Positions 14,221 through 62,646 of a stretch of DNA of 64,000 nucleotides are shown here, in pieces. The position numbers were made by a program, and so were the translations under genes. Below the pieces are notes generated by a model. The model did no database searches. It worked only from the letters and a program-made list of their open reading frames with translations, and was not told the origin of the DNA. The DNA lies in IMG/VR virus record IMGVR_UViG_3300023174_000033, positions 62,001 to 126,000 of that record. One strand, written 5' to 3'. How positions within the stretch are numbered: position 1 is the first letter of the stretch; every line of letters starts with the position of its first letter.

Positions 14221-14451
14221 ATGCAGAACTTAAGTGAATATTACTTGATTATTGAAAAAATAATTGACTTACCAAGTCCTAAAAGAAATCTTATTATGGA
14301 TATGTACAGGGATATGGTACATAGATTAGGTGATAAAAGTTCAGAGGGTATGGTTAAATCCTATTTCAACACATTAGAAATGGGTGGATTTATTACCAAC
14401 AGAACCATGGCTGAAAGGGATAAAAAATTAGGTGATATCGTAAATGAATAA
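14221..14451 (+). CDS. Small hypothetical protein with C-terminal RDKKLGDIV motif
   Basis: 76 aa; shared C-terminal tag (see findings). Confidence 0.6.
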   Translation: MQNLSEYYLIIEKIIDLPSPKRNLIMDMYRDMVHRLGDKSSEGMVKSYFNTLEMGGFITNRTMAERDKKLGDIVNE

Positions 14452-14812
14452 CTTTGATGTATCAGTTATTGATTATTTAGGTAAATTTCAAAATGGGGTT
14501 TTGGTCTTAATTGCTATAACCTTGGATAGTCAATATTTTGATGCAACTTTTTTTTACACAAAAGAAGAAATAGTTTTAACCATCTCGGACGAGATGGAAG
14601 AAGTTGTTGGGAATATAAAAGAACACCCAAATTATAAGGACCTACTGTTAATAATATTGAAAAAAGTTTTACCTTATCATGATATCGCGGATAGAATTGA
14701 CGATGTTGACTTTGGTAAATGGATTAAAGGGCAAATAGAACTATTTTCAGATGATGAACCAGAAATTATCCCAGATGGAGTAATTAAAAATATAAAAGAA
14801 GATAATGAATAA
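14444..14812 (+). CDS. Hypothetical protein
   Basis: 122-aa ORF overlapping the previous gene. Confidence 0.6.
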   Translation: MNNFDVSVIDYLGKFQNGVLVLIAITLDSQYFDATFFYTKEEIVLTISDEMEEVVGNIKEHPNYKDLLLIILKKVLPYHDIADRIDDVDFGKWIKGQIELFSDDEPEIIPDGVIKNIKEDNE

Positions 14813-14903
14813 AAAAAGATTAATATTATTGATTTGCTTATTGTCACTTTCCCTATCAGCATGTAAGACAAGTAAAACTTGTCCTACATACGAATGGATT
14901 TTC

Positions 14904-15437
14904 TCAAGCTTGAGAAATATCTGATAGTGTTAGGTCTAAAGCTGTAACCCGACCAAAGATACTCACCTCAATCTTTGCCTTCTCTCTTTCATAATCAAGG
15001 TTTGTAATTTTACCTTTGAATGAAGCGAATGGTCCGTTCTTTACAGTAACTTCTTGACCAATTGCGTATAAACCTTTATCAACGCTATTCCTAACCTCAA
15101 CCTCACCGTTCATCCTATCAATTTCAGATTTTCTTAAAATAATTGGATTGCCTTGCGGATCTTTTAAAACACTAGTCATTCCATTAATTACTTTAGTGAA
15201 GTGGAGCACCCTATCAATTGATTCGGTCTCAACGAAAATATATCCTGGGTAAAGAATTTGTTCTTTCTGTTTTACTTTACCATCTTTGATATAAGATATT
15301 TTCTGCGAAGGAATTAGAACAAAGATCTCTTCTTTAAATTCCCTTAACATATCAAATTTCAATTTTTCAGATACACTCTTCTCACGATTGTTCTGTACCT
15401 TTACTGTATACCAGTTTTTTTCTACCAATGTTTCCAT
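14904..15437 (-). CDS. nusG: NusG-family transcription elongation/antitermination factor
   Basis: NGN domain (WYTVKV...YPGYIFVE) and KOW domain (V.VKNGPFASFKGKI...VSIFGR). Confidence 0.92.
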   Translation of the reverse strand: METLVEKNWYTVKVQNNREKSVSEKLKFDMLREFKEEIFVLIPSQKISYIKDGKVKQKEQILYPGYIFVETESIDRVLHFTKVINGMTSVLKDPQGNPIILRKSEIDRMNGEVEVRNSVDKGLYAIGQEVTVKNGPFASFKGKITNLDYEREKAKIEVSIFGRVTALDLTLSDISQA

Positions 15438-15439
15438 AT

Positions 15440-15841
15440 TTATTTGTATAAATTCTTTAAGTATTTGATTTCTTCTTTTAACTCATCGGAATGAAATTTT
15501 ATTATAAACTCCAATTCGGAATCTTTAAACTCAAAATTATTCTTAATCAAAGTGAGTTCCTCATCTGAAAAGATAAAATCTTTCTTCTTTTCTGTTTTGG
15601 ACCAAAACCATTTTGGATATGGTTTATCTTTCATAAAAAGGAAGATTAAATCCATCCCGACTGAATAGTCTATATGTTTATCGTTCAAAAGTTGTGAAAT
15701 TTCTGGGTATTTTTTTGATAACAACCGATTTACGATGAAAAAGTATTTAATCTTTTGTTCATCAGTTACATACTTCCAATCCGAATGATTTTTGAACATA
15801 ACATTCGTAACACCTAAAAGATTGTCATCAATTTTTTTCAC
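15440..15841 (-). CDS. Possible clamp-loader small subunit (T4 gp62-like)
   Basis: FFIVNRLLS...LN...PYPKWFWSK resembles the gp62 pattern. GTG start at 15841 chosen to avoid overlap with the divergent gene. Confidence 0.4.
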   Translation of the reverse strand: MKKIDDNLLGVTNVMFKNHSDWKYVTDEQKIKYFFIVNRLLSKKYPEISQLLNDKHIDYSVGMDLIFLFMKDKPYPKWFWSKTEKKKDFIFSDEELTLIKNNFEFKDSELEFIIKFHSDELKEEIKYLKNLYK

Positions 15842-15902
15842 AGACTTTTTTATAAAATAAGATACAAAAGTTAAATAAATTTTATATCTTTGTAAAAATA
15901 TT

Positions 15903-17186
15903 ATGGCATACAAAGCAAAAATCAGTCAGCTTACCAATCTTAAACCACATCCCAATGCGGATCGTGTACAATTGGCTATTTGTAATGGGAATCAAGTTGT
16001 TGTTGGTATACAACACAAAGAGGGTGATATCGGCGTTTATTTTGACTCCGATGGACAACTATCCGAAGAATTCTGTAAAATGAATAATCTCTATAGAGAT
16101 TTAAAATTGAACTCAAATCCAGATTCTAAACCAGGATTTTTTGATAATAATAGACGAGTTAGAACTCAAAAGTTTCGCGGAGAGGTTTCTGATGGACTTT
16201 GGCTTCCCTTGCAGTGTTTTAGTTACATTTCAGACTATGATGCATTGGAAATTGGAAAAGAATTTGATAGTATAAACGGTCACGTCATTTGCAATAAGTA
16301 TGTTAATAAACAGACTATAGAATTTGCTTCAAAAAATAAAACCGTAAGAACTGCTAGAAAATCCGTAATGTTCAAAGAACATTTTGACACTGAACATTTT
16401 GGAAAAAATATAGAAAAATTCAAAACTGGTGATCTAATCATAATAACCGAAAAGTTACACGGAACTTCGGGCAGAGTAGGATATGTGAAAGTTGAAAAGA
16501 ACTTGAAATGGTATGAACGTATACTTGGGAAATTGGGAGTCAGTATTGAATCCTTTGAATGGCAATATCTAAATGGAACTAGGCGTGTTGTTCTAGAAGA
16601 ATCTACTGGTAAACAGTTTCATGATCCAAACATAAGGGAGAAATCTTTTGAGTTATTCAATGGTAAATTGAAGAAGGGTGAATCTGTTTATTTTGAAATT
16701 GTCGGATTTGAACCAAGTGGTTCTCCAATTATGCCGTCGGTTAATACAAAACTTCTTAACGATAAAAACTTCACCAAGAAGTATGGAGATCATATGATTT
16801 ATTCTTACGGATGCGAGACTAGAGAATGTGATATTTATGTTTACAGGATAACTTCAACCAATGAGGATGGTGATACTGTTGACTATTCTTGGTCTGATGT
16901 TGTTAAAAGGTGTGGAGAGTTGGGAGTAAAAACTGTTCCGGAAATAATGAAATTCGTCTATGGTGATAGTCAATCTGTTTCCGAAAATTGGTTTGATTTA
17001 GTTCCTTACTTTGCAAATGGACAATCAAGTTTAGACGAATCTCACATAAGTGAGGGAGTTTGTGTGAGAATTGAAGGAGGACTTGAAAACAAAACCTTCA
17101 AGTACAAGAGTTTTGAATTCAAAGTACTTGAAGGTATTATTAAAGATCTTGGCCAAATTGACCAAGAAGAAGCTCAATCACTATAA
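15903..17186 (+). CDS. ATP-dependent RNA ligase (DRB0094/Rnl5-like, N-terminal OB-type domain)
   Basis: HPNADRVQLA N-domain; motif I TEKLHGTS; FEIVG; EGVCVR; FKYKS. Confidence 0.85.
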   Translation: MAYKAKISQLTNLKPHPNADRVQLAICNGNQVVVGIQHKEGDIGVYFDSDGQLSEEFCKMNNLYRDLKLNSNPDSKPGFFDNNRRVRTQKFRGEVSDGLWLPLQCFSYISDYDALEIGKEFDSINGHVICNKYVNKQTIEFASKNKTVRTARKSVMFKEHFDTEHFGKNIEKFKTGDLIIITEKLHGTSGRVGYVKVEKNLKWYERILGKLGVSIESFEWQYLNGTRRVVLEESTGKQFHDPNIREKSFELFNGKLKKGESVYFEIVGFEPSGSPIMPSVNTKLLNDKNFTKKYGDHMIYSYGCETRECDIYVYRITSTNEDGDTVDYSWSDVVKRCGELGVKTVPEIMKFVYGDSQSVSENWFDLVPYFANGQSSLDESHISEGVCVRIEGGLENKTFKYKSFEFKVLEGIIKDLGQIDQEEAQSL

Positions 17187-18155: not shown

Positions 18156-18206
18156 GATAATTCGTTTTTTTTTGTTTATATTTGTAAAAACTTGTTTTGT
18201 TTCCAA

Positions 18207-18533
18207 ATGAAAAATCATTTAAGGGATAGAGGTTGGAGGAGATTCAAATTGGAATGTTACCACTTGAGACGCATGAAAAGGTGGTCGGGTTTGTATTGGT
18301 ATCGTTGGACTGATGTAAATCTAATATCAATTCAAAAGCCCATATGGATTGATTCTATAGGATTGGGAAACGTGAACATTGCGAAGAAAACAAGAACAAC
18401 AAAATGGGATACAAGACACAAAATGAAATGGGGGAAAAAGGGCAAAAGGAATTATGACTATAGCTCCGACCCCAATACAAGAATAAAAGATAAAGTTAGA
18501 TTTCTTAAAGAACTCAGAGAATATGGATATTGA
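18207..18533 (+). CDS. Small, very basic Trp/Arg-rich hypothetical protein
   Basis: ATG at 18207 downstream of a TATATTTG element; overlaps the next gene. Confidence 0.55.
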   Translation: MKNHLRDRGWRRFKLECYHLRRMKRWSGLYWYRWTDVNLISIQKPIWIDSIGLGNVNIAKKTRTTKWDTRHKMKWGKKGKRNYDYSSDPNTRIKDKVRFLKELREYGY

Positions 18534-19059
18534 GAAATTTATACCAGATACAAATCCCAATTGGGTCATAAGAAACAATACACTATATTATAAAAAGGGA
18601 GGATTAATACCTTTTTTAAAAAAAATTGATGGTAATTACTTTATATCACTTGACAGAAGGGCTACCAAGAAAGTAACCAAACTAATGAAGAAGTTACAAG
18701 ATATGGGTATAATTTTCTATCTATGTGATAGAATGACAATTGCTGAAAAACATATCTATAATCAAGATTTAGAGCGAATAATCAGAAATTATTTATTAGG
18801 ATTGAGTGATGAAAATTTCTTCCATTATGTACAAAATTCAAATTTTGACTACATAAAAAATCTTACTGATTTTTTAAATATGTACGATTGTCATAAACTT
18901 TTCAAAAAAGTTTATGATTCGCTCTTACACGGACATTTTACGAAAGTAACGATGGATTGGTATACTAGAACTAAATATAATATCGTTAAAAATGAGGAGA
19001 TTAGAGATTTCTACCAGATCTTGGAAAGACAAATCAAGTTAAATATCTTTTTTTCCTAG
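18523..19059 (+). CDS. Hypothetical protein
   Basis: 178 aa; ends RQIKLNIFFS. Confidence 0.6.
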   Translation: MDIEKFIPDTNPNWVIRNNTLYYKKGGLIPFLKKIDGNYFISLDRRATKKVTKLMKKLQDMGIIFYLCDRMTIAEKHIYNQDLERIIRNYLLGLSDENFFHYVQNSNFDYIKNLTDFLNMYDCHKLFKKVYDSLLHGHFTKVTMDWYTRTKYNIVKNEEIRDFYQILERQIKLNIFFS

Positions 19060-19257
19060 AATTTTTTCTATCTTCTCCCTTCTCAATCTAAATAAATATT
19101 TCTCCAAGAATTTTTGTATTTCTTCATCAATTCTCAAAGTTATCACAGAATTGTCACGAGATTTATCCAAGAGTCCTCTTATAAACTTTTGGAACTCTTC
19201 CTCAAAAATTGGGTCACCACTCAATTTTTTATAATTTTCATGCCATAGGAATTTCAA
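19039..19257 (-). CDS. Small hypothetical protein with C-terminal RREKIEKIL motif
   Basis: 72 aa; overlaps the topoisomerase stop. Confidence 0.55.
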   Translation of the reverse strand: MKFLWHENYKKLSGDPIFEEEFQKFIRGLLDKSRDNSVITLRIDEEIQKFLEKYLFRLRREKIEKILGKKDI

Positions 19258-21092
19258 GTTTGTAAAAGTTCATTTTTTCTCAAATCGGAATCTTTCCCAA
19301 ACCAAACATTCAAATATTTTTTTGAACTTTCGTCGGTTGTAATCCTTACAAGTTTGGGATTATTTATTATTTCTTTGTATTCATCATCAATCAAGGCACC
19401 AAGACCCTTTTTATATTCAATTTCCCAATCTTTTACATTGATAGTCTCTACCCATTTATTGTATTCTTCTTGATTATAAAAAGAAATCTTCTTCTTATTC
19501 TTTAAATGCTTTGATACCACAATTGGAGTCTCCGCTTTAAATACCATCGGGTTTTCAAATAATTCTGGCCAGTACTTGTGAAAGAAATTTATCAATAAAC
19601 CCACAATTGAACTTCCATCATGGTCAGCATCACAATAAAAAAGAATTTTACCATATCTTAAAGTTCCAGGAACAGCCTTCTGTCCTAATTTCAATCCTAA
19701 AGCCCCCATTAAATTAACAACCTCATTATTTGAAACTAATTTTTGATTGTTAATTTCTAATGCATTTATGAATTTTCCTCTTAAAGAAAAAGCACCTTGA
19801 GTTTGTGGATCGCGATACTTTCTAAAAGCCGATGAAGCAGAGTCACCTTCAAATATTGAAAGTGAGCACTTCCACCTCTCACGACTTTTAGCATCAATTA
19901 ACTTTTCAACCTTTATCTTTGAAAGATTTTTATTCAATTCTCTTGCTAACTTATTTTCATCAGCGGATTTCTTTTTCTGTACCCAATCAAGGATTGAACT
20001 AATTATCTCGGATTTCAAAATTGACTTTATCATCTTTTCAGAAACTTCAAATGTGTATCCAAAATCTTTAACCTCTGTAATTAGTTTTTCTTTTGTTTGG
20101 GAAGAGAAACTTGGATTTACAACTGTTGAACAAATAAAAATCTGAATATGATTCTTCAACTCCGATGGTTTGATATCAACCTTGTGTTTCTTCTGAAAAA
20201 AATCACGAAGATTTGTGACTATTTGGTTCATCACGTAATCAACATGATTTCCACCATCGTAAGTTTCTGTTGAATTAACAAATGATATTTGTTGAAATCC
20301 CTCATCTGAATGAGCGACTCCTAAACTCCAAGATTTATCTTGATTTGTCTCAAAAAAATAATCCTCACGATAAAACTTGATGTAGTCCTCAAAAGACTTA
20401 ACATTTATTAACTCATCATTAAAGTAAATTTTAATTGCGGGATTACAACCAGCAATATCATATACTCGTTTCTTTATAACATCAAACATTTCAGAATTCA
20501 AACAATTGAGTCCGAATTTTTCATAATCTGGAATAAACTTAATTGATGTGTGATTAACCTTACTTTTTTTAATTTGAGGTTCTGTTTTTTTACCCATGTT
20601 ATCAGAAAAAATCTGAAAATAGTGGTTCTTACCATCACAAGTGGATATAATAAATTCTTTTGAATAAATGTTTGTTAGACTTGAGCCAACACCATTTGTA
20701 CCTGCCCAAGTTCTTGATTCAGAATCATCAAAGTTGGAACCAGCTTTAAGATTTGAGAATATCATTTCTGGTATCCATTGATTTTCTTCTTTATGCTTTA
20801 CGACAGGTATACCACCGTTATCCCAAACTTCAATTTGGTCATTTTTAATAGTAATCTTTATTGTGTTTAGTTTACTATCATCTCTTTTATGTTCATCAAC
20901 AGAGTTTGTGATGATTTCGTCAAATATCTTGAGAAGTCCAGGATTATAAGTAATTTCATTTGAAATCATCTTCCCATCATTAATAAGAAATTTCTTGGAT
21001 GTATGTGGTTTTATTGAACCAATATACATTGAAGGTCTTGACAAAACATGAGTTCTATCATCTAATTTCTTAAACTTTTTCTCTATGGACAT
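19254..21092 (-). CDS. Type IIA DNA topoisomerase ATPase+TOPRIM subunit (T4 gp39+gp60-like)
   Basis: RPSMYIGS, EIITNSVDE, DNGGIP, GTNGVG, FEGDSA, DADHDG, YKKGLG; likely start ATG 21092 (MSIEKK). Confidence 0.93.
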   Translation of the reverse strand: MSIEKKFKKLDDRTHVLSRPSMYIGSIKPHTSKKFLINDGKMISNEITYNPGLLKIFDEIITNSVDEHKRDDSKLNTIKITIKNDQIEVWDNGGIPVVKHKEENQWIPEMIFSNLKAGSNFDDSESRTWAGTNGVGSSLTNIYSKEFIISTCDGKNHYFQIFSDNMGKKTEPQIKKSKVNHTSIKFIPDYEKFGLNCLNSEMFDVIKKRVYDIAGCNPAIKIYFNDELINVKSFEDYIKFYREDYFFETNQDKSWSLGVAHSDEGFQQISFVNSTETYDGGNHVDYVMNQIVTNLRDFFQKKHKVDIKPSELKNHIQIFICSTVVNPSFSSQTKEKLITEVKDFGYTFEVSEKMIKSILKSEIISSILDWVQKKKSADENKLARELNKNLSKIKVEKLIDAKSRERWKCSLSIFEGDSASSAFRKYRDPQTQGAFSLRGKFINALEINNQKLVSNNEVVNLMGALGLKLGQKAVPGTLRYGKILFYCDADHDGSSIVGLLINFFHKYWPELFENPMVFKAETPIVVSKHLKNKKKISFYNQEEYNKWVETINVKDWEIEYKKGLGALIDDEYKEIINNPKLVRITTDESSKKYLNVWFGKDSDLRKNELLQT

Positions 21093-25294: not shown

Positions 25295-25326
25295 TTTGGT
25301 GAATTAAATTTTTTGTTCTATATTTG
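25295..25326 (+). promoter_or_regulatory. Bacteroidota-type sigmaA promoter (-33 TTTG / -7 TAnnTTTG)
   Basis: TTTG 25295-25298, 20-nt spacer, TATATTTG 25319-25326. Confidence 0.7.
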
Positions 25327-29611: not shown

Positions 29612-29643
29612 TTTGTATATCCAATTTATTATAGATACCTTTG
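29612..29643 (+). promoter_or_regulatory. Bacteroidota-type sigmaA promoter
   Basis: TTTG 29612-29615, 20-nt spacer, TACCTTTG 29636-29643. Confidence 0.7.
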
Positions 29644-33221: not shown

Positions 33222-33620
33222 ATGTGGATAGTTGTGGCTAAAAAAGGAACCTTCGTACACAGAGACGATATGATTTCTGATATACTTGAAATTTCAAGAG
33301 AAGAATCTGAAGATTTTCAAGAATTCTATGTGACAAAGAATACATCAAATTTTAGGTACAATGTTGTAGCTAGTATTTTTTACGCAAAAATATATAAGTC
33401 CAAGGGATACTGTGAAAGAATAGTAAATAAATTTAAATTCTATAAAAACTCTGAATTCAATAGAAATCCTTTCCACTGGTTAAAAGACTATCATTTAAGT
33501 TTCAGAAAAGTAACCCAAGAAGAATGGAATAGAGTTTGTGATAATGAATTAAAGAAACTTGAACAGAGTTATATTGAACATAAGTCCTTGATTGAAAGAA
33601 AAAAGAGTATGTATAAATGA
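33222..33620 (+). CDS. Hypothetical protein
   Basis: 132-aa ORF in operon. Confidence 0.55.
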   Translation: MWIVVAKKGTFVHRDDMISDILEISREESEDFQEFYVTKNTSNFRYNVVASIFYAKIYKSKGYCERIVNKFKFYKNSEFNRNPFHWLKDYHLSFRKVTQEEWNRVCDNELKKLEQSYIEHKSLIERKKSMYK

Positions 33621-33895
33621 TAAGGTCTAAGACTTGGGTCAAAGATAGATATTTTGATTATGTCATTGGAGATATCGTAAAATTAGTCAGAAAGAAAAAG
33701 AACGGTCACCCAAGGTCTTTATCATTTGGTGTGAGTTACAAAGTTTTGAAAGTTGAAAATGAGGATTTATTTGTGCAAGAACTAAATGAACAACAACTTC
33801 ATTTAGGTGATATACGGATTAAAAAAGTTAATAGGAATTATTTCGTACCAATTGATAAAATGAGGGACGAACTCATAAAGGATATTCTTAATTAA
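33617..33895 (+). CDS. Small hypothetical protein with C-terminal RDELIKDIL motif
   Basis: 92 aa; ATGA overlap with the previous gene. Confidence 0.55.
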   Translation: MIRSKTWVKDRYFDYVIGDIVKLVRKKKNGHPRSLSFGVSYKVLKVENEDLFVQELNEQQLHLGDIRIKKVNRNYFVPIDKMRDELIKDILN

Positions 33896-42600: not shown

Positions 42601-45196
42601 CACCTTGATAACCCTGCGGACCACTTTCTCCTTGATAACCCTGCGGACCAGTATCACCTTGATAACCCTGCGGACCAGTATTACCTTGGAATCCCTGTGG
42701 ACCACTTTCTCCTTGAAAACCTTGCGGACCAGTATCACCCTGATATCCTTGCGGACCGGTATCTCCCTGTAGTCCCTGTGGGCCAGTATCACCTTGATAT
42801 CCCTGTGCCCCCTGTGGGCCAGTATCACCTTGATATCCTTGCGGACCGGTATCACCTTGAAATCCTTGATCACCTTGTGGGCCAGTATCACCTTGTGATC
42901 CCTGTGGGCCAGTATCACCTTGATAACCCTGTGGGCCAGTATCTCCTTGAAATCCTTGATCACCTTGTGGGCCAGTATCACCTTGATATCCTTGAGGACC
43001 GGTATCTCCCTGAACGCCTTGAGGACCAGTCTCACCTTGGAAACCTTGAGGACCAGTCTCACCTTGAACACCAGTTGAACCAGTACCACCAAATGATCCA
43101 TTAGCAACCCAAGTAACATTATAAACTTGTTCTGTTGCGAAACTTCCATTTGACACTAATGCGGTTGAGTCAACCGAAATTGAATAAGTTGAACTTCCAT
43201 ATGTAACACCAGTCACTCGGTATAGACCAGTGTTACTGGATGTTAAAGCATCATATACTTGTAAATAACTTACATTTTGACTATCTACGAAAGTTAAGAG
43301 TTGTTGAAACCAAACTGAATAATCTATGGATTGATTATCTAGTTTATTGAAAATAAATTCACTATTACTAGCAAAAGTAGGTTGATCGGAAGTAAAATAT
43401 TTTGATACCGGTTCAGTTGCTGAATTTAGACCTTGGTATTTCCACTGAACAACAGTTTGAACTAATGAAACAACAACCCCCTGTGGACCTTGTTCACCTT
43501 GAGTTCCGGAAAAACCTTGAGGACCGGATAATCCTTGAACACCCTGTGGGCCAATTTCCCCTTGTGGGCCACTTTCTCCTTGAAAACCTTGCGGACCAGT
43601 ATCACCTTGATGCCCTTGCGGACCAGTATCACCCTGTAGTCCCTGTGGACCTGTTTCACCTTGATACCCCTGTGCCCCCTGTGGACCTGTTTCACCCTGG
43701 TAACCTTGTGGGCCAGAAATACCTTGCACACCTTGTGGACCAGTTTCTCCTTGGAATCCCTGTGGGCCGGTATCACCTTGATATCCCTGTGGACCTGATA
43801 AACCTTGTAGTCCTTGTGGACCCGTCAAACCTTGTGGACCAGTTAAACCTTGATAACCCTGTGGGCCAGAAAGTCCTTGTGGACCCGTGAAACCTTGTGG
43901 GCCTTGTGGACCGGTGTCACCTTGATAACCTTGAACTCCGGTTTCTCCTTGCCAACCTTGTGGACCAGAAACACCTTGAGGACCTGTAGTGCCTTGGAAA
44001 CCTTGAACACCAGTACTGCCCTGCCATCCTTGTGGACCAGAAAGTCCTTGTGGACCAGTAACACCCTGGAAACCTTGAACACCAGTACTACCCTGCCATC
44101 CTTGTGGACCAGATAACCCCTGTAATCCTTGTGGACCAGTAAAACCTTGATATCCTTGCACACCAGTGTTTCCCTGCCATCCTTGTGGACCAGATAAACC
44201 CTGGAATCCTTGTGGACCAGTCATACCTTGATATCCTTGTGGACCAGATAACCCCTGTAAACCTTGTGGACCTGTATCACCTTGCAAACCTTGTGGGCCG
44301 GTTCTACCTTGGAATCCCTGTGGACCAGTTCTACCTTGATAACCTTGAGGCCCAGATAAACCTTGAAAACCCTGTGGGCCACCAGAACCTTGAGAACCAG
44401 TGGCACCACCACCGGTTATAATCTTACCACTGAATTGTTGGTCAAAAGTAACAACGTAAGTATCTGTACTAATATAATTAACAGAATATGAAGCTGGTTG
44501 AATGTTTACGTTACCATTGGAGGTATCAACTGCTTGTACTAGTGGATATCCATTGAAACTATGTGTAACAGTAACTTGAGTTTTATTAGAAAAGTCTGTT
44601 ATAAAATTTGAGACAGCATCAAGACCTCTCGGACCTTGAACACCTTGTGGTCCACTCAAACCCTGAAAACCAGTATTGCCTCTACCTGGGTTTGTAGCCC
44701 AACCAATTGTATAGGTTCTCCCATCTACAAATACACCACCAACTGCAATTGGTTGCACATTTAGATCAAACCCCGTAAATCCATCATCTACAATATTTGT
44801 TACTTGAAAAAGAGCTCTGTTTAGAGGGTCTTGATCTTCAACTATATTTAAATAACTTATTTGTTCACGGTCAACAAAAACTTTCAATTGTTGTAACCAA
44901 GGGGAATAATCCACACCATAAAGGTCAATATATTGAATACTTAAAGAAGTAATAAATTCAGGATCGTCATTATTTGCAACAAATTTTTGTATGGTTGTAA
45001 GATTACCACCAGCTAGATATTTCCATTTTGATGAAGGTGAAGATAATTGCACTACCACGCCCTGTGGTCCTGTTTCGCCCTTTGGTGGTAAATCTACCGG
45101 ATTCCCAAATCCATCGTAGAATTCATTTCCGTTTATAACTTGTACTAATCGTTGATATGTACCTGATACGGTTGTTCCGGTTAAATTATATGACAT
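36647..45196 (-). CDS. Giant collagen-like fibre protein with seven interspersed globular repeat domains
   Basis: 2849 aa; long (Gly-X-Y)n runs dominated by GPQG; repeated ~125-aa '[13 protein letters not shown]...YNVTW' domains; TAATATATAG upstream. Confidence 0.9.
37500..37875 (-). repeat. Near-perfect 27-bp tandem repeat (about 13 units, GPQGDQGEM)
   Basis: Unit CCTTGGTCACCCTGTGGCCCCATCTCA on the + strand repeated with few substitutions. Confidence 0.9.
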
Positions 45197-56616: not shown

Positions 56617-57450
56617 TTATTTAGAATCTATAATATCAAAAAGGAACTTTTTGATATTTTCTTCTTTATTATTTTCAGGAATCTGATTCTCCGGAAACCA
56701 TGGATTTGATATCATTTCAAGGTATTTTTCTTGGTTATTGTCTATCTCAATTATCTTTTCAATCATTTCTTTGAAATCATTGTGATCATAATAATTTATG
56801 AAAGATTTAGTATTGAATTCTTTATAAATATCTGGATTACCCCAATAGATAGGAATTGAATTTACCGTCATTGGTTCCATAATTTTTTCAGTGGTATATC
56901 CTTTATGTTGCGGTCTATAAGCATTGTTTTCAAAAGCAATTGAAAATTTATAAGTGGACTGAAACTCTCTTTTATCTTGAACAACGTATCCAATATTATT
57001 CATCCACCGACCACCACAATCTACCTTTTTATATTTTGACAACTCCTTTACAAAGTTATTTCTTTCTTGACAGTTACCGTTTGAAGCTACAAAATTGCAA
57101 AAATTTCTTTTGGAAAAAGATTCATCTATCACTTTCTCTCTCTGTAATTCATAGTATCCATCATAAAGCAAATAATGTGGTAATCTATAATTCCTTGGAT
57201 TATCCAAATAATCAAAAGAAAATGACCAATCACAATAATCCAAAGGGGGTGCTATATTTTCACCAGTATAAAATATCTTTTTACATTTATAATTTTGGTG
57301 ATTATTTCCAAATATTGAAAAGAATAAGAAATCAGGATTGTTACTGATTTCTATATCATATTCATCTTTTAAAAGATTGTAAAAATAATTATTAGTTTTA
57401 TCATATCCTCCCCAAAAATCAGAAAAATCAATTTTTATTTTCTTTTTCAT
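56617..57450 (-). CDS. Alpha-1,3-fucosyltransferase-like (GT10)
   Basis: FYTGEN, YRLP, FCNFVASN, YKFSIAFEN...GYTTEKI, IPIYWG. Confidence 0.88.
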   Translation of the reverse strand: MKKKIKIDFSDFWGGYDKTNNYFYNLLKDEYDIEISNNPDFLFFSIFGNNHQNYKCKKIFYTGENIAPPLDYCDWSFSFDYLDNPRNYRLPHYLLYDGYYELQREKVIDESFSKRNFCNFVASNGNCQERNNFVKELSKYKKVDCGGRWMNNIGYVVQDKREFQSTYKFSIAFENNAYRPQHKGYTTEKIMEPMTVNSIPIYWGNPDIYKEFNTKSFINYYDHNDFKEMIEKIIEIDNNQEKYLEMISNPWFPENQIPENNKEENIKKFLFDIIDSK

Positions 57451-58142
57451 ATTGAAACTTGCAACCTCTCATTAAGTGATAGCTTTCTTCTTATTTCCCA
57501 TTTATGCTTATCATCCTCAAATTTATTGTAGTAATTTTGGTCATTTTGGTCTGGATTTCTTTTACCATTTGACCAATGAAAATGCTCAAATACAAAATCT
57601 TTATCTTGCAACCTTTCATCAATAATTAATTTCAATTGTTCAGCATTCAAATAGTGTTCAGCATCGGAACACAAATGATTATAAGCCGGATTATAAATTA
57701 TTTTATTCATTTTGAGCAAAGCCGAATAAGTCATAATTGGAATACTAAATACAGGTTCTGCCATATTACTAAAATCAAGAGCTTGGTACCCATCATTGAC
57801 CATCAAACAACCTTCCCTACCTTTTAACTTTTCAGATATATACTTGTCCCAATTATTTGGAGGTAAGAAATCATCAGAAGCAAAAATCACAACATCATCC
57901 GAGTTTCCCTCAACTCTAGAACTTAAATAATATGATGGATAAGCAACCCCTATTCTATCAGGTCTATCAGTTATAACAACATCTAAACTTGGTAAAGTTT
58001 TTAAGATTGAATCTTTCTGTGTTTGTGTGTTTACACAGACATATGTTTTTATCGTTTCATTTTTTGAGGATTTGTCCATCCAAGTTTTGAAAGAAGATAG
58101 AAAAACCTCGGGTCTTATCGTACACCATAATAAATGTATCAT
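57447..58142 (-). CDS. Putative glycosyltransferase (GT-A fold)
   Basis: TIRP, ASDDF.P..WD, Y.H..SD.E, FEH.H. Confidence 0.65.
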   Translation of the reverse strand: MIHLLWCTIRPEVFLSSFKTWMDKSSKNETIKTYVCVNTQTQKDSILKTLPSLDVVITDRPDRIGVAYPSYYLSSRVEGNSDDVVIFASDDFLPPNNWDKYISEKLKGREGCLMVNDGYQALDFSNMAEPVFSIPIMTYSALLKMNKIIYNPAYNHLCSDAEHYLNAEQLKLIIDERLQDKDFVFEHFHWSNGKRNPDQNDQNYYNKFEDDKHKWEIRRKLSLNERLQVSI

Positions 58143-58912
58143 ATTGCCATATTTTTCATTTTATCAACATTACCAATGGCATCCTTTGATTGGACTGTTA
58201 ATTCGTAAAGTTGTTCTTTATTTAGGGTTAAATATCTGTTATATAAATGTAAATTTCTGAAATATAGTTCTTGATTTATATTGCCACGAATATGCCACAA
58301 ATGATAACATTTATCTTTAGCTTGAAAATGGTTTAAATAATTTTTTACTTTTATTGATTGGTAATCATCTTCAGCTCCCCATCCCCAAAAATCCTCGTTC
58401 CATCCACAGATTTTCTCTAAAGCTTGCTTTTGGAATATTATTATCCCACCACAAAAAGGAACTTTTTGGTGGTCAGTTTCTCCTCTACCTGGCCTTACAA
58501 TTGAATATAATTGGTTTATATCACCAGTTTTCCAATATTGTTCTGTTTCATTATATTCCAAATCTACCACCGATGAATATGGGTTTATACATTCATATTC
58601 GGAGACCAAATTAATTGAATTCATTAAAGACTCTTTATTCATAACCAAATCCGCATCTCCGAAAACTATAACGTCAGATTGAGCACTCTTCCAAGCCACA
58701 TTGAAACACCAAGCTTTATTAAAGGGATGTTCATTTTGAAGGAATATGTGTTTAAATTTTACACCCAAATCAACAGTTGAGAGGTAAGAATTCTTATCAC
58801 TTTCCACTACGATTATTTCACAATCAAGTTCCGAAACCCAACCCAAAATTTTTTGTAGATTATGAATTCTGTCTGGTGAATTTCTATAAGCTATTATATA
58901 AGAAAATTTCAT
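58139..58912 (-). CDS. Glycosyltransferase, GT7/GT2 galactosyltransferase-like
   Basis: IIAYR, FNKAW..N, DAD, GWNEDFWGWGAEDD, HLWH. Confidence 0.85.
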   Translation of the reverse strand: MKFSYIIAYRNSPDRIHNLQKILGWVSELDCEIIVVESDKNSYLSTVDLGVKFKHIFLQNEHPFNKAWCFNVAWKSAQSDVIVFGDADLVMNKESLMNSINLVSEYECINPYSSVVDLEYNETEQYWKTGDINQLYSIVRPGRGETDHQKVPFCGGIIIFQKQALEKICGWNEDFWGWGAEDDYQSIKVKNYLNHFQAKDKCYHLWHIRGNINQELYFRNLHLYNRYLTLNKEQLYELTVQSKDAIGNVDKMKNMAI

Positions 58913-60081
58913 TTTTTTGATTTTGACTTTTTAATTTTAACAACCATTTCTTCCTTTTCCTTATTATAATCAAGTAGAATTTTACTCCCCTTTGGTGGAT
59001 TTGACTTGATTATTTCTTCTGTGATTGGATCCTCAATGTACTTTTGTATTGCTCTCTTCAATGGTCTAGCGCCATATTCAGCATCGTATCCTTTTTCTGT
59101 GACATAGTCTTTAGCCGCATCTGTCAAATCAAAATCAAAATCTAAAGATGCGATCCTTTCTATCATTTTTTTCAACTCCACGTTGATTATCTTTTGAATA
59201 TCTTCTTTTTCCAAAGAATTAAAAGTTATCACTTCATCAATTCTGTTTAGAAATTCAGGCGCGAATGTTTTTTTCAATTCTTTCTCAATTACTTCTTTTG
59301 AGTCAGAACCCTTATTTGACTCTTTTGATTTTGTAGTAAACCCTATACCGGTTCCGAAATCTTTTAATTGTCTAGAACCAGTATTTGAGGTCATTATAAT
59401 TATAGTATTCTTAAAATCAACTTTTCTACCCATTGAGTCTGTTAGCTGACCATCATCTAAAACTTGTAGTAACATATTAAAGACTTCTGGGTGAGCTTTC
59501 TCAATTTCATCAAGTAAAATTACAGAATATGGACGCCTTCTTACTTTTTCAGTTAGTTGACCACCCTCGTCATGTCCGACATATCCTGGAGGAGCTCCAA
59601 CCAATCTTGAAGTAGCAAACTTCTCCATGAATTCACTCATGTCAATTCTTATAAGTGATTCAGAAGAATCAAATAAATGTTCAGCAAGTACCTTGGCTAG
59701 TTGAGTATTGTGACTCAATAAACCATTTGTATAATACCTTCTGTCAGAATTTCCATCTAACTCAAGATCAAACATCACTTCATTATAATTCAACTCTTCA
59801 ACAGAATCAACTTCTTCAATTCCATTTTCAGCAATTATTCTATCACCGACTTTTAAGTCTTTCACAAAAACTTCTTCCAAGTTTTCTCTGAAAAGAATAT
59901 GATTATCAGCACAATAAAGTATTGTTTTATTTTTAGTAGTTAGTCTAAATACATCATACTTTACTGTTTGATGTAAATATTTTATATCTACAAATCCTGA
60001 ATCAGTCAATACTTCAAAATCATCAACTTTGTAGGAATCTGTTATTTTTTTATCATATAATGATAATTCGCTTGCTTTCAT
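58909..60081 (-). CDS. clpC: C-intein fused to the C-terminal half of a ClpC-like AAA+ ATPase (split gene)
   Basis: ATG 60081. 125-aa intein fragment, then TQLAK..., RIDMSEF, SRLVGAPPGYVG, LLDEIEKAHP, GIGF loop, PEFLNRID, GARPLKRAI. Confidence 0.88.
   Translation of the reverse strand: MKASELSLYDKKITDSYKVDDFEVLTDSGFVDIKYLHQTVKYDVFRLTTKNKTILYCADNHILFRENLEEVFVKDLKVGDRIIAENGIEEVDSVEELNYNEVMFDLELDGNSDRRYYTNGLLSHNTQLAKVLAEHLFDSSESLIRIDMSEFMEKFATSRLVGAPPGYVGHDEGGQLTEKVRRRPYSVILLDEIEKAHPEVFNMLLQVLDDGQLTDSMGRKVDFKNTIIIMTSNTGSRQLKDFGTGIGFTTKSKESNKGSDSKEVIEKELKKTFAPEFLNRIDEVITFNSLEKEDIQKIINVELKKMIERIASLDFDFDLTDAAKDYVTEKGYDAEYGARPLKRAIQKYIEDPITEEIIKSNPPKGSKILLDYNKEKEEMVVKIKKSKSKK
59707..60081 (-). mobile_element. 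Split intein C-fragment (no block A, no endonuclease)
   Basis: VLTDSGF, block B CADNHIL, block F MFDLEL, block G YYTNGLLSHN followed by +1 Thr. No N-terminal Cys/Ser block A. Confidence 0.85.
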
Positions 60082-60154
60082 AAAATTAAAAAAGATTTTC
60101 AAGGGTTTTTATCAAACTAATTGAATTTGTTTAGAAAAAAATTTGAAAATAAAG

Positions 60155-60225: not shown

Positions 60226-60393
60226 CTATTTAAGAATCTCTTCTATTTTTTCATCCCTCTGAAGTTGTGTGTAATAATCTTCAGATTGAAGATCAAAAAC
60301 ATAGCATTCATACATACGAATTAAATCACTATAGGATTCAAGTGCAATGTGTTTAGACTCTTGTAGATAATTTAGGTATTCTTCAGAATTCAT
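60226..60393 (-). CDS. 55-aa hypothetical protein with C-terminal RDEKIEEIL motif
   Basis: Below the ORF-track cutoff. MNSEEYLNYL...QRDEKIEEILK*; TATCTTTG element directly upstream. Confidence 0.6.
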   Translation of the reverse strand: MNSEEYLNYLQESKHIALESYSDLIRMYECYVFDLQSEDYYTQLQRDEKIEEILK

Positions 60394-60447
60394 AATACAA
60401 AGATAGGAATTATTAGTTAGAATGTGAGATATTTCTCAAATCTTTAT

Positions 60448-61074
60448 TCAAAGATTTGAGAAATATGTTGGTCTCTTCACAACTGGTAATACTTTATTTA
60501 CCCAAACTTCATGATTGTCACTTAATTTACCAATTGAGGAATATCCGTAATCTTCAAGATAAGAAAAATCATTTGTTTTATTATTCCAAGTATAGTCATG
60601 GTACTCAAGTAAAATAACTCCGAATTTTACGAAGTCAAAATCAATACCACTTAAAACCTCATGCTCATAACCTTCAACATCAAGAGAAAAGAAATCAATA
60701 TTCCTCATATTGTGTTTTTTCAAAAGAGTGTCTAAAATAGTCACTGGCCAAATTGTATAATTTTCTTGGTCAATATCATGAATACCAGGAATATTGTACA
60801 TATGGTCATACTCATGTTTATAAGCTTTGATGGTTTCTTCCTTATAATCTCTACCAACAAGTGCGTAATTCTCAACTATTGATTGGGGTCTCAATATTTT
60901 ATAATCCTCATTATGGTCCATTCTTGGCTCAACTAACAATCCGGACCATCCGTTTTGTTCTAGCCTGTAAGTATTATTTTGATCTGTTGGGTGACTTGAA
61001 CCGGTCTCTAAATAGACTCCTTTGAAGTTTTTAAAGAAGTCTAATATGAATCGGTCTATATTGTGTTGACTCAT
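60448..61074 (-). CDS. FkbM-family SAM-dependent methyltransferase
   Basis: YLETGS, NTY.LE..GWSGLLVEP, IDFFSLDVEGYE. Confidence 0.85.
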   Translation of the reverse strand: MSQHNIDRFILDFFKNFKGVYLETGSSHPTDQNNTYRLEQNGWSGLLVEPRMDHNEDYKILRPQSIVENYALVGRDYKEETIKAYKHEYDHMYNIPGIHDIDQENYTIWPVTILDTLLKKHNMRNIDFFSLDVEGYEHEVLSGIDFDFVKFGVILLEYHDYTWNNKTNDFSYLEDYGYSSIGKLSDNHEVWVNKVLPVVKRPTYFSNL

Positions 61075-61126
61075 AATTTTATTTTTTTTTGTGTGTATTT
61101 TAAGGAACTCATTTAGAGTCCCTTTG

Positions 61127-61198
61127 TAGTCCCGCCAGGAATCGAACCTGGAAGAATTGCTTAGAAGGCAACCAGTATATCCGTTTACTTACAGGACC
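61127..61198 (-). tRNA. trnR: tRNA-Arg(UCU)
   Basis: GGTCCTGTAAGTAAACGGATATACTGGTTGCCTTCTAAGCAATTCTTCCAGGTTCGATTCCTGGCGGGACTA; no encoded CCA. Confidence 0.88.
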
Positions 61199-61210
61199 AT
61201 ATACTTTATA

Positions 61211-61588
61211 TCAAAGACTCTGAAAAAAGTTCTTCAATTTAATCCTTTCATCCCTATAATCGTCCCAGGTACTGCCTTTGCCCAAATCAACCATATGTTT
61301 CTGTTTCTTATGACAAACATAATACTTTTCATTTTCAAATCCAAGTTCAAAGTCAGAATTTTCCCAATATTCATCAATTAACTTATTAATCATTTTCTGA
61401 ATAGATTCTTCTGTTGTGACTTTAATATGGAAAGGATCGATGTAGAATGGGAAATCTCCCAATTCATCTTCATCAAACATTTTATCACCTTCTTTATCAA
61501 GGGATTTTTTCATTTTCTTTTGAAGAACTTTAATCCTTTCAAGGAGTTCAATTTTTTCGTCAATGCAATCAACTTCAATTTGTATCAT
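61211..61588 (-). CDS. Hypothetical protein
   Basis: 125 aa; ends RDERIKLKNFFQSL. Confidence 0.55.
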   Translation of the reverse strand: MIQIEVDCIDEKIELLERIKVLQKKMKKSLDKEGDKMFDEDELGDFPFYIDPFHIKVTTEESIQKMINKLIDEYWENSDFELGFENEKYYVCHKKQKHMVDLGKGSTWDDYRDERIKLKNFFQSL

Positions 61589-61857
61589 GATAATAAATTT
61601 TTAATTTGTTCGTCTCTGTTTAATTGAATAAAATAAGGGTCCTCTTTCATAAATATCTCAATGTTAGATCTGAATTGTCTAGACAAAGGTTTGTATTTGT
61701 GTAAATAAATTTGTAGTTTTTCATTGGGATATAATTTGTGGAAGGTTTTCAAAAATTCTTCATCACTTTCGTCCCATCTACCGAGAGATTTAACACGGTA
61801 TTCACTCCACATTTTATTTGTACCCTGAAACACATGACCTTTGTATAGACCAATCAT
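61585..61857 (-). CDS. Small hypothetical protein with C-terminal RDEQIKNLL motif
   Basis: 90 aa; coupled to greA. Confidence 0.55.
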   Translation of the reverse strand: MIGLYKGHVFQGTNKMWSEYRVKSLGRWDESDEEFLKTFHKLYPNEKLQIYLHKYKPLSRQFRSNIEIFMKEDPYFIQLNRDEQIKNLLS

Positions 61858-62327
61858 TACTTGACTCGGATTTCCAAAATCCCAAGTTCCATTTTACCAA
61901 TAGGAACTTCAGCAATTACTTTATCACCAACTCTTTTACCCATCAGAGCAGCCCCAATCGGACTGAGGTGTGAAATTTTTCCACTCTTGATATCAATTTC
62001 ATTCTCGGGCACAATCCGATATTCAATTGTAACACCACTTTTGGTATTCTTAAATTTAACCCATGTAAGTAGTTGAACTGTACCATCATCAATAATACCC
62101 TCTAAAATTTCAGCATCTGCCAATTTTTGTGAAAGATTATTAATTTTTCTATTCAAATCATCAAGGGCTGTTTTAGCAGCATCATATTCAGCATTTTCAG
62201 ATAAGTCACCCTTATCTTTTGCTTCTGCTAAATTTTGAATATGTTCCCTAAGTTGAGGACCCCTCATATCTCTTAGTTCTTGTTCTAGTTTTTGAAACCC
62301 TTCACGGGTCATAGGTATTCTTGCCAT
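61857..62327 (-). CDS. greA: Transcription elongation factor GreA
   Basis: MTREG..KL..EL, GDLSENAEYDAAK, IS..SPIG.AL.GK.VGD. Confidence 0.95.
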   Translation of the reverse strand: MARIPMTREGFQKLEQELRDMRGPQLREHIQNLAEAKDKGDLSENAEYDAAKTALDDLNRKINNLSQKLADAEILEGIIDDGTVQLLTWVKFKNTKSGVTIEYRIVPENEIDIKSGKISHLSPIGAALMGKRVGDKVIAEVPIGKMELGILEIRVK

Positions 62328-62349
62328 ATTTTTAATTTTAATTTGAATT

Positions 62350-62646
62350 TCAGTTATATTTATCTAATTCTAAAAGTTGATTTATTTTTTTGTCCCTAAG
62401 TTTGTTTTTTATCAAGTCATAACTAAGTATGAAGTGTTTATACATTTCTTCTTCTGTAAAATATGATAAATTTCTATAATCTCCATCAAGTCCAACAGCA
62501 TATCCAAATCCTTTTTTATCAGTAGCATTGTTCCAAGTCAAATCACCACACCCACTTATTCTATAAGTGCATCCATACTTCATGGGCAAGATTTCATTAA
62601 AACAATAAATACTATCCCCTACTTCAAATCCAATTTCTTTTTTCAT
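62350..62646 (-). CDS. Small hypothetical protein with C-terminal RDKKINQLL motif
   Basis: 98 aa. Confidence 0.55.
   Translation of the reverse strand: MKKEIGFEVGDSIYCFNEILPMKYGCTYRISGCGDLTWNNATDKKGFGYAVGLDGDYRNLSYFTEEEMYKHFILSYDLIKNKLRDKKINQLLELDKYN

What the first reader, a model, noticed from the sequence alone, without database searches (positions are those of the whole stretch)
14221..62646. Shared C-terminal R-D/R-x-K-I-x-x-I/L-L tag on many unrelated small proteins
Seen: otherwise dissimilar small ORFs end in nearly the same amphipathic motif. Clear cases: RDKKLGDIV (14221-14451), RREKIEKIL (19039-19257), RDELIKDIL (33617-33895), RDEKIEEIL (60226-60393), RDEQIKNLL (61585-61857), RDKKINQLL (62350-62646). 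Weaker cases: RQIKLNIFF (18523-19059), RDERIKLKNFF (61211-61588). Several lie in operons headed by host-type (early) promoters. Inference: a common docking or sorting signal, for example for a phage AAA+ machine (the split ClpC or the MoxR/VWA pair), a scaffold, or an oligomerisation hub, onto which diverse effector domains have been shuffled.
Basis: partly seen in the sequence, partly recalled or inferred. Interest (0 to 1): 0.65.

Follow-up and report, generated by a model that had tools for sequence, protein, structure and literature searches.

The report
Shared C-terminal helix on huge-phage proteins
About one in twelve proteins of this 465-kb freshwater phage, and one in ten in two related huge phages, ends in the same short arginine-plus-leucine/isoleucine helix, which selection maintains at the protein level; what the helix binds, if anything, is unknown.

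Summary
The window is part of a 464,605-bp huge phage. Genome-wide, 45-48 genes end in R-x-x-[KQ]-[IL]-x-x-[IL]-[ILFV] followed by 0-8 residues. That is 23% of genes of 130 aa or less. The strict pattern occurs 23 times at C-termini, against 0.05 in shuffles, and once internally. Codon use at the motif matches the genome's, and about half the carriers have no overlapping downstream gene, so the constraint is on the protein. Two orthologue series of window genes conserve R0, +3/+4 and +7/+8 while +1, +2, +5 and +6 drift, which points to one face of a helix. Related huge phages carry 118, 98 and 14 such tails, each genome with its own flavour. A fourth relative and the first 76 kb of T4 have none.

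"Unrelated proteins" is only partly right. About 40% of carriers here are one SH3/KOW-like barrel family (DUF6501-like) whose own terminal helix is the motif. Window gene 33617-33895 is a remote member of that family. Most carriers in the relatives show no detectable kinship with it. No link to ClpB, MoxR or any other partner was found.

Best reading: a modular recognition helix, receptor unknown.

The parts
14221..14451 (+). 76-aa protein ending RDKKLGDIV+NE (motif nt 14416-14442). Its N-terminus is not barrel-like by sequence.
   Evidence: Translation. In 73 orthologues (61-95% id), R0 and K+3 are 100% conserved, L/I at +4 and +7 are 100%, and +1, +2, +5, +6 are free. Out-of-window profiles do not recover it.
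19039..19257 (-). 72-aa protein ending RREKIEKIL+GKKDI (motif nt 19057-19083). It has a TTG start that overlaps the stop of the gyrB-like gene.
   Evidence: The profile trained on the relative W01 gives E 0.5.
33617..33895 (+). 92-aa protein ending RDELIKDIL+N (motif nt 33863-33889). It is the last gene of its operon and is an SH3/KOW-like barrel plus C-terminal helix.
   Evidence: In 39 aligned orthologues, R83, D84 and I87 are invariant and I90 and L91 are at least 90% conserved. The AF2 model has pLDDT 83, five strands and a helix at 79-91. Foldseek hits are KOW, PWWP, SH3 and YorP. hhalign against core family A1 gives 94.7% probability.
60226..60393 (-). 55-aa protein ending RDEKIEEIL+K (motif nt 60232-60258). 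It is followed by tRNA-Cys, not by a coupled gene.
   Evidence: It is the best window hit of the W01-trained profile (E 0.0009). Its N-terminus resembles an internal part of 18523-19059.
61585..61857 (-). 90-aa protein ending RDEQIKNLL+S (motif nt 61591-61617). It lies immediately downstream of the GreA homologue.
   Evidence: Profile E is 0.09-0.3. No orthologue was found in four related huge phages.
62350..62646 (-). 98-aa protein ending RDKKINQLL+ELDKYN (motif nt 62371-62397). It lies upstream of the GreA homologue.
   Evidence: Profile E is 0.006-0.01.
18523..19059 (+). 178-aa protein ending RQIKLNIFF+S. This is a doubtful member.
   Evidence: It matches the loose pattern only, and profiles give E 3-8. 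Its last 21 nt are antisense to the 3' end of 19039-19257.
61211..61588 (-). 125-aa protein ending RDERIKLKNFFQSL. It is not a member by any test used.
   Evidence: The spacing is off by two residues, and it is absent from all profile searches.

Best explanation
The motif is a short C-terminal amphipathic alpha-helix of about 13 residues that starts 4 residues before the invariant Arg. It acts as a portable protein-level recognition module.

Its ancestral home is a very large, uncharacterised family of 60-90-aa phage proteins built from an SH3/KOW-like barrel (DUF6501-like) plus this helix. In this clade of huge freshwater phages, the helix alone is also found at the end of hundreds of otherwise dissimilar, mostly small proteins with no known relatives. 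These are encoded in translationally coupled arrays that concentrate near the ends of the genome record.

One face of the helix (R0, K/Q+3, I/L+4, I/L+7, L+8) is kept constant while the rest of each protein diverges. I infer that this face is read in trans by one common receptor, of the phage or of its host, so that a varied repertoire of heads is brought to the same place or machine.

Shown: the motif exists, it is confined to C-termini, selection acts at the protein level and on one helix face, it is predicted to be helical, it is widely distributed, and each genome has its own flavour.

Inferred: recognition in trans. Unknown: the receptor and the purpose (loading, turnover, localisation).
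For: - Enrichment is about 460-fold at C-termini and absent internally.
- Codon use at the motif equals genome usage. Carriers at operon ends, or before a tRNA, keep the motif.
- Two orthologue series with different N-termini conserve R0, +3/+4 and +7/+8, while +1, +2, +5 and +6 vary.
- R is not replaceable by K. K-x3-h-x2-hh shows 1.2-1.6x C-terminal enrichment, against 19-25x for R.
- AF2 places a confident helix from R-4 to the end in two families.
- Carrier counts are 45, 118, 98 and 14 in four related genomes, and background level in a fifth. The first 76 kb of T4 have none.
- N-terminal parts fall into 247 clusters from 273 proteins. 108 of 118 and 98 of 98 carriers in two relatives do not match the barrel profile.
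- Flavours are genome-specific: RD.KI[ND]KIL, RK.[KI]I..LL, KRT.LIDKML, and in unrelated contigs RNQQIDKII and RDKQINEIL.
- In many-repeat proteins found by the family profile, the barrel mostly recurs without the helix, so the helix is a separable unit.
Against: - No receptor was found. The split ClpB, ClpP, DnaK and clamp ideas have no specific support.
- In the barrel families the helix follows the last strand without a linker and is modelled with pLDDT 86-95 in a monomer. This fits a helix packed on its own domain, which would bury the conserved face.
- Y27, F60 and R67 are the only invariant residues of the core family, which could be an intramolecular contact.
- Genome-specific flavours could be founder effects of recent expansions rather than co-evolution.
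- Sequence searches on 50-100-aa proteins are insensitive, so many 'unrelated' heads may be diverged barrels, as 33617-33895 turned out to be.
Confidence: 0.45

Rival explanations
1. The helix is a structural cap acting in cis, inherited by descent. All carriers descend from the barrel-plus-helix family. The helix packs on its own domain, and it is simply the slowest-evolving part of a superfamily that diverges very fast. There is no common partner.
For: - The helix is contiguous with the last strand and confidently modelled in monomers.
- Invariant Y27, F60 and R67 in the core family suggest an internal contact.
- Window gene 33617-33895 looked unrelated but is a remote member.
- Tandem arrays show expansion by duplication.
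- The barrel-plus-tail family is very large: 5370 representatives, and 95 of 105 small hits keep the tail.
Against: - Carriers range from 49 to 622 aa. They include zinc-ribbon, helical and membrane-anchored heads and a glycosyltransferase.
- The barrel signature G..Y.V is present in 82% of core members but only 8-18% of other carriers, against 5-9% in controls.
- The barrel recurs without the helix in repeat proteins.
- Strict R and K/Q conservation on the hydrophobic face is unusual for a buried cap on unrelated folds.
Confidence: 0.3
2. The tail is a turnover or chaperone tag. It is a degron or tether read by an AAA+/protease or Hsp70 system: the phage's ClpP, split ClpB or DnaK, or the host's ClpXP or Lon.
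For: - The phage encodes ClpP, both halves of a ClpB-like ATPase, and DnaK.
- The tail lies within 0-2 residues of the C-terminus in most carriers, and it ends in two aliphatic residues.
- DnaK is present in the four tail-bearing genomes and absent from the tail-free one.
- The layout is analogous to SspB, which has a small barrel plus a C-terminal ClpX-binding peptide (from my own knowledge).
Against: - 50 genes share DnaK's presence pattern.
- ClpP is present in the tail-free relative and not detected in one that has tails.
- There is no Clp_N domain, and the ATPase is of the ClpB type, which does not feed ClpP.
- Up to 8 residues can follow the motif, so a free carboxylate is not part of it.
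- Core tails are acid-rich, which makes them poor Hsp70 sites.
Confidence: 0.1
3. The helices bind one another, as homo- or hetero-oligomers, and so multimerise small heads.
For: The helix is amphipathic with an i, i+3, i+4 aliphatic pattern. R0 with an acidic or amide residue at +5 loosely recalls the R-h-x-x-h-E trimerisation motif of short coiled coils (from my own knowledge; positions).
Against: - Hydrophobic spacing is broken between -1 and +4, and Arg sits in the middle of the face, so this is not a canonical heptad.
- Promiscuous pairing among 45-118 different proteins seems costly.
- The homotetramer prediction returned no verdict, which does not count either way.
Confidence: 0.07
4. 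The tail is a basic amphipathic helix that binds membrane or nucleic acid, as a localisation signal of the MinD/FtsA type.
For: Non-barrel tails carry a net charge of +0.5 to +2.5 over 13 residues, with a K at -4.
Against: - Barrel-family tails have a net charge of -0.9.
- R is never replaced by K.
- The hydrophobic content is small and lacks aromatic residues.
Confidence: 0.05
5. The motif is a by-product of a nucleotide-level signal at gene ends, such as translational coupling, the downstream start region, or a recombination site.
For: 20 of 44 carriers overlap the next start by ATGA, against 9 of 154 other small genes. The overlap explains the last residue (K, E, S, or GI).
Against: - Synonymous codons vary as in the rest of the genome. 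For Arg codons, chi-square P is 0.32.
- I and L interchange through first-base changes.
- 22 of 44 carriers have a gap or an opposite-strand neighbour.
- Orthologues at an operon end keep the motif.
Confidence: 0.02

Closest known systems
DUF6501 (PF20111) and YorP-type small SH3-like barrels of phages and Bacillota
   Same: They share the small five-stranded barrel. Repeat proteins found by the core-family profile pass the DUF6501 cut-off. The YorP NMR structure appears among fold matches of the window protein.
   Different: The phage's own proteins score below the DUF6501 cut-off (17 against 23.8 bits). The function of DUF6501 is unknown. No description of a shared terminal helix on other heads was found.
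SspB-type adaptors with a C-terminal ClpX-binding peptide
   Same: Both have a small beta-barrel body plus a short C-terminal peptide that ends in aliphatic residues and a lysine. Both fit the logic of a variable head with a constant tether.
   Different: There is no sequence relation. No ClpX or N-domain receptor was identified here. The motif is helical with an invariant Arg. The comparison rests on my own knowledge, not on a test.
Terminal cargo or sorting peptides: T4 capsid-targeting sequence, encapsulin cargo-loading peptide, T9SS C-terminal domain
   Same: In each case one short terminal element is shared by many unrelated proteins of one system.
   Different: The T4 signal is N-terminal and is cleaved. 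Encapsulin peptides are extended and Gly- or Ser-rich. The T9SS domain is a 70-100-aa fold. No virion or secretion link is shown here.
Poxvirus ankyrin/PRANC and other viral adaptor multigene families
   Same: They are large, fast-evolving viral families with a constant C-terminal docking element and variable target-binding parts, clustered near genome ends.
   Different: They are eukaryotic viruses with a different fold and a known receptor (SCF). Here the receptor is unknown.
LxxLL and PIP-box helical docking motifs
   Same: The [IL]-x-x-[IL]-[IL] core equals LxxLL. With Q at +1 the spacing equals the PIP box Q-x-x-h-x-x-a-a.
   Different: Q at +1 occurs in only 15 of 275 carriers, and an aromatic pair in only 1 of 275. 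No gp45-type clamp was detected.

Membership tests
DUF6501 (PF20111) | Score at or above the Pfam gathering cut-off of 23.8 bits | tested here: not met
   The best phage protein scores 17 bits, E 0.005. Window proteins give no hit. Distant repeat proteins reached by the family profile do pass, at 26-73 bits, so the relation is remote and not a membership.
SH3/KOW-like small beta-barrel fold | Five-stranded barrel superposable on SH3 or KOW domains | tested here: met
   AF2 models have pLDDT 84 and 83. Foldseek probability is 0.9-1.0 with TM 0.45-0.58 to SH3, KOW, PWWP and YorP. VIA Z is 5-5.9 with rmsd 2.4-2.9 over 52-61 residues. These scores are middling and show fold level only.
PIP-box or clamp-binding motif | Q at the first position, an aromatic pair at the last two positions, and a sliding clamp present | tested here: not met
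   Q at +1 occurs in 7 of 45, 3 of 118, 5 of 98 and 0 of 14 carriers. An aromatic pair occurs in 1 of 275. PF09116 gives no hit in the genome, although that model also rang poorly in the control genomes.
C-terminal degrons of the ssrA or ClpX C-motif type | Recognition needs the free alpha-carboxylate at a fixed distance, with small aliphatic terminal residues | tested here: inconclusive
   0 to 8 residues follow the motif, most often 0-2, and the last residue is set by stop/start overlaps. Binding and turnover are not testable with these tools.
MinD/FtsA-type membrane-targeting helix | A net-basic amphipathic terminal helix in which K and R are interchangeable | tested here: not met
   Core tails have a net charge of -0.9 and non-core tails +0.5 to +2.5. 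K cannot replace R0.
Translational-coupling or downstream start-region signal | Constraint at the nucleotide level, with dependence on a coupled downstream gene | tested here: not met
   Codon use at the motif equals the genome's. Half the carriers have no overlapping downstream gene. Orthologues at an operon end conserve the motif.
   No Clp_N was found. The D2 half matches ClpB residues 608-849, and the D1 half lies elsewhere in the genome. Homologues, though weak, also exist in the tail-free relative.

The most novel reading that the evidence does not exclude
The tail is a proteome-wide address code of a clade of huge phages. One phage-encoded (or host) receptor reads the R-x3-[IL]-x2-[IL]L helix on about 10% of the phage's proteins, for example to load them into the capsid for co-injection or to gather them at one intracellular machine. 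The receptor and the code co-evolve, which gives each phage its own dialect.
Probability: 0.25. Interest if true: 0.85.

Novelty: new variant of a known kind. Interest (0 to 1): 0.62.

Why it matters
Huge phages carry hundreds of small genes that nobody can annotate. A nine-residue ending shared by 8-12% of the proteome sorts a large part of that unknown material into one class. It also provides an experimental handle, because a synthetic tail peptide or a tail-GFP fusion could fish out the receptor.

If the tail is an address or docking code, it would be the first such proteome-scale code described in a bacteriophage. It would also explain how new small effectors can be recruited simply by acquiring a tail.

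Tried and rejected
- Pfam and PHROGs on the 8 window ORFs, 10 array members and 20 of the largest carriers gave nothing above cut-offs, apart from one glycosyltransferase.
- The search for related loci with alignment A1 failed because it has no conserved stretch of 7-10 columns. With a large window protein it found no relatives in viral contigs.
- megablast against GenBank phages gave no match.
- tblastn of two barrel-family representatives against GenBank phages gave no match.
- No solved structure exists for the family.
- Orthologues of three window carriers in four related huge phages: none convincing.
- The PIP-box/clamp idea was rejected.
- Hub made of many barrel repeats: no such protein exists in this genome or in four relatives.
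- Receptor hunt by charge-swap columns across 105 orthologue sets: the two ClpB halves rank 1st and 4th, but P is about 0.006 before 105 tests, and their divergence pattern inflates the count. Not significant.
- Phylogenetic profile: 50 genes, DnaK among them, share the pattern 'present where tails are present'. This is uninformative.
- Four-copy complex prediction of the 33617-33895 family scored 0.00, which the tool calls no verdict. It is not evidence for or against self-association.
- A K-based tail in the tail-free relative: no coherent motif.
- T4 as a possible model carrier (from my recollection and an Atlas hint at PF27001): no annotated T4 gene in the first 76 kb ends in the tail, and PF27001 is not in the local library.
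- Literature searches found no description of the motif.
- No RNA runs hold the region.
Full report
**Setting**

The window is bases 62,001-126,000 of a single 464,605-bp virus record with 32% GC. CheckV puts its completeness at about 98%. The record encodes DnaK, a T4-type topoisomerase II, RNA ligase, ClpP, both halves of a ClpB-like ATPase, GreA and tRNAs. Its nearest GenBank relatives are uncultured huge phages of 460-735 kb:
- LR756502.1, called W01 here
- LR745206.1
- LR756504.1, called W02
- LR756501.1, called W03
- LR756500.1, called W04

The DNA occurs in lake and freshwater metagenomes from several studies. Promoter-like TTTG...TAnnTTTG matches and, by eye, T9SS-like protein ends elsewhere in the genome suggest a Bacteroidota host. 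I did not test that.

I called 542 genes crudely over the whole genome and counted the motif.

| Pattern | C-terminal (within 8 aa of the stop) | Internal | Shuffle means (C-terminal, internal) |
|---|---|---|---|
| Strict, R-[DENQ]-x-[KQ]-[IL]-x-x-[IL]-[IL] | 23 | 1 | 0.05, 0.65 |
| Loose | 33 | 4 | 0.2-0.4, 4.4 |

Shuffling only the last 30 residues gives the same low expectation at C-termini. Reversed proteins give 0 C-terminal matches for these three patterns. N-termini give 0-1.

Profile iteration and a wider pattern bring the census to 45-48 genes. That is 8-9% of all genes, and 44 of the 194 genes of 130 aa or less. About half lie in one array at 427-442 kb. The rest are scattered, seven of them in the window.

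A profile trained only on phage W01 finds 29 C-terminal and 3 internal matches in all six frames of this genome. The window cases are individually modest, because nine residues carry little information. Profiles trained outside the window recover these:

| Window gene | E-value with out-of-window profiles |
|---|---|
| 60226-60393 | 0.001-0.02 |
| 62350-62646 | 0.006-0.01 |
| 33617-33895 | 0.006 with the out-of-window profile; 2.5 with the W01-trained one |
| 61585-61857 | 0.09-0.3 |
| 19039-19257 | 0.5 |
| 14221-14451 | not recovered |

The motif of 14221-14451 is confirmed instead by its orthologues (below). Of the two 'weaker' cases, 61211-61588 is not a member. 18523-19059 is doubtful, and its last seven codons are antisense to the end of 19039-19257.

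**Protein or nucleotide signal?**

- Arg, Ile, Leu, Lys, Glu and Asp codons at the motif follow genome-wide usage. For Arg, P is 0.32. Ile and Leu interchange through first-base changes.
- 20 of 44 carriers overlap the next gene by ATGA. This explains why the last residue is so often K, E or S. The other 24 do not, 22 of them having a gap or an opposite-strand neighbour. They include 33617-33895, which ends its operon, and 60226-60393, which precedes tRNA-Cys.
- Two orthologue series settle the matter.
  - In 39 homologues of 33617-33895 (57-96% identity), R83, D84 and I87 are invariant and I90 and L91 are at least 90% conserved. The residues after the motif vary freely.
  - In 73 homologues of 14221-14451, R0 and K+3 are 100% conserved and L/I at +4 and +7 are 100%. 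Positions +1, +2, +5 and +6 are free.
- On a helical wheel, R0, +3, +4, +7 and +8 form one face.
- K cannot stand in for R0. C-terminal enrichment of K-x3-h-x2-hh is 1.2-1.6x, against 19-25x for R.

**What carries the motif**

The array proteins align over their whole length (alignment A1). The only invariant residues are Y27, F60 and R67. AF2 gives a five-stranded barrel followed directly by a helix at residues 63-75, which runs from R-4 to the end. The model has pLDDT 84 and pTM 0.70. Fold matches are SH3 domains, at middling scores.

A profile search of 1.84 billion representatives finds 5370 relatives at E of 0.001 or better. Of the 105 small hits listed, 95 end in the same tail. Long proteins with 3-14 copies of the barrel mostly lack it and pass the DUF6501 cut-off. 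So barrel-plus-helix is a very large, unnamed phage family, and the helix is a separable addition to a DUF6501-like barrel.

By profile, 17-25 of the roughly 45 carriers in this genome belong to that family. None of the window carriers does by sequence. However, 33617-33895 folds into the same strand order plus a terminal helix at 79-91, with KOW, PWWP, SH3 and YorP as fold matches. It aligns to A1 at 94.7% probability. Without the helix the probability falls to 24%, but the 'G..Y.V' strand stays in the same register. It is therefore a remote member.

Barrel and non-barrel tails also differ in detail:
- An aromatic residue at -7 occurs in 16 of 17 barrel tails and 4 of 28 others.
- Asp at +1 occurs in 0 of 17 barrel tails and 14 of 28 others.
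- Net charge is -0.9 for barrel tails and +0.5 for the others.

**The relatives**

I fetched four related genomes whole and applied the same gene calling.

| Genome | Carriers | Share of genes |
|---|---|---|
| This genome | 45 | 8% |
| W01 | 118 | 12% |
| W02 | 98 | 10% |
| W03 | 14 | 1.4% |
| W04 | 2 | background |

C-terminal over internal density of R-x3-h-x2-hh is 25x, 19x, 24x, 4x and 1.3x in the same order.

Each genome has its own flavour:
- This genome: R[DEQN].KI[DE].[IL]L plus one residue
- W01: K..hRD.KI[ND]KIL
- W02: RK.[KI]I..LL, ending exactly at the stop
- W03: E.KN.KRT.LIDK[MV]L

Two unrelated metagenomic contigs that carry barrel-family arrays have further flavours (RNQQIDKII and RDKQINEIL), again also on non-barrel heads.

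The N-terminal parts of 273 carriers fall into 247 BLAST clusters. 108 of 118 carriers in W01 and 98 of 98 in W02 miss the barrel profile, and they lack the barrel's G..Y.V signature beyond control level. Carriers range from 49 to 622 aa. The largest ones have almost no Pfam matches.

Carriers are clustered. Half have a carrier as neighbour, which is 2-3 times the random expectation, and they concentrate in the first and last twentieth of each record. The first 76 kb of T4 contain no annotated gene with the tail. Flavobacterium phage MaF61 gave no match either.

**Mechanism**

Three facts together argue that the conserved face of the helix is read by something common to all carriers:
- The same face is conserved on very different bodies.
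- Arg at R0 is strict.
- Each genome has its own dialect.

That reading is a docking or address helix, and I hold it at about 0.45.

The main rival, at about 0.3, is that the helix is a cis-packing cap and the slowest-evolving part of one hyper-diverse barrel superfamily. Three things support this rival. The helix abuts the last strand. It is confidently modelled in monomers. And one 'unrelated' window protein proved to be a hidden member of the barrel family. Against it stand the zinc-ribbon, helical, membrane-anchored and large carriers, and the existence of tail-less barrels.

- The ATPase is a split ClpB with no Clp_N domain.
- ClpP occurs in tail-free W04 and was not detected in W03.
- DnaK co-occurs with tails, but so do 49 other genes.
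- A charge-swap co-variation scan was not significant.
- No many-barrel hub protein exists in these genomes.

A four-copy complex prediction returned no verdict. A nucleotide-level explanation is contradicted, as set out above.

**Novelty**

I found no paper describing the motif, and no curated family for the carriers. The kind of thing is familiar: a constant terminal element on a varied multigene repertoire. Its scale in a bacteriophage proteome, its dialects, and its unknown reader make it worth an experiment.

Noticed in passing
window 18523-19059 (+) and 19039-19257 (-): These two convergent genes overlap by 21 nt. The weak tail KLNIFFS-stop of the + gene is encoded antisense to the post-motif extension GKKDI-stop of the - gene.
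   Followed up: partly
window 61857-62327 (-): This is a phage-encoded GreA homologue (152 bits to the GreA equivalog). It is flanked on both sides by tail-bearing small genes. The operon is headed by a Bacteroidota-type TTTG..TAnnTTTG match at 63250-63281.
   Followed up: partly
window 58909-60102 (-); G000 169694-171184 (+); G000 357252-357911 (-); window 11950-13848 (+): The ClpB-like ATPase is split. Its D2 half lies in the window and its D1 half about 48 kb away, with no Clp_N domain. The phage also has a bona fide ClpP (224 bits) and a DnaK that is 77% identical to that of LR756502.1. Together these look like a phage-borne chaperone/protease set.
   Followed up: partly
window 36647-45196 (-): This 2849-aa ORF lies in a region of 42-46% GC in a 32% GC genome. 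Many long shadow ORFs lie on both strands.
   Followed up: no
L001:6222-6578 (-) = G000 432222-432578: This 118-aa array member carries two tails. One is internal (..YRQETIDQLL..) and one is terminal (REIKIKKILE), as if two units had fused.
   Followed up: no
W01 (LR756502.1), e.g. 588119-588202 (-), 20419-20511 (+): A variant of the barrel-family tail ends R..KL.ELGI-stop. The final GI comes from an ATATGA stop/start overlap. The same ending occurs in metagenomic relatives.
   Followed up: partly
window 56617-58912 (-) and 60448-61074 (-): A cluster of a fucosyltransferase, a family-2 glycosyltransferase and an FkbM-type methyltransferase lies next to the ClpB D2 gene.
   Followed up: no
L001:12534-17694 = G000 438534-443694: By eye, three larger genes among the tail arrays look like secreted host-type proteins. 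One has a zinc-protease HExxH motif, and two have endings like T9SS sorting domains. This hints at a Bacteroidota host. It was not checked with any family search.
   Followed up: no
window 29612-29643 (+), 25295-25326 (+), 63250-63281 (-): Bacteroidota-type promoter-like matches sit in intergenic regions ahead of operons, two of which contain tail genes. The window total is 11 against 6.1 expected, and 6 of 100 shuffles reach 11.
   Followed up: partly
L162 (contig of GCA_041890195.1), 4.7-18.4 kb: An unrelated 27% GC contig carries about 50 consecutive small genes, about 28 of them with the tail in the flavour EEYRNQQIDKII. The array phenomenon therefore extends beyond the LR7565xx clade.
   Followed up: partly
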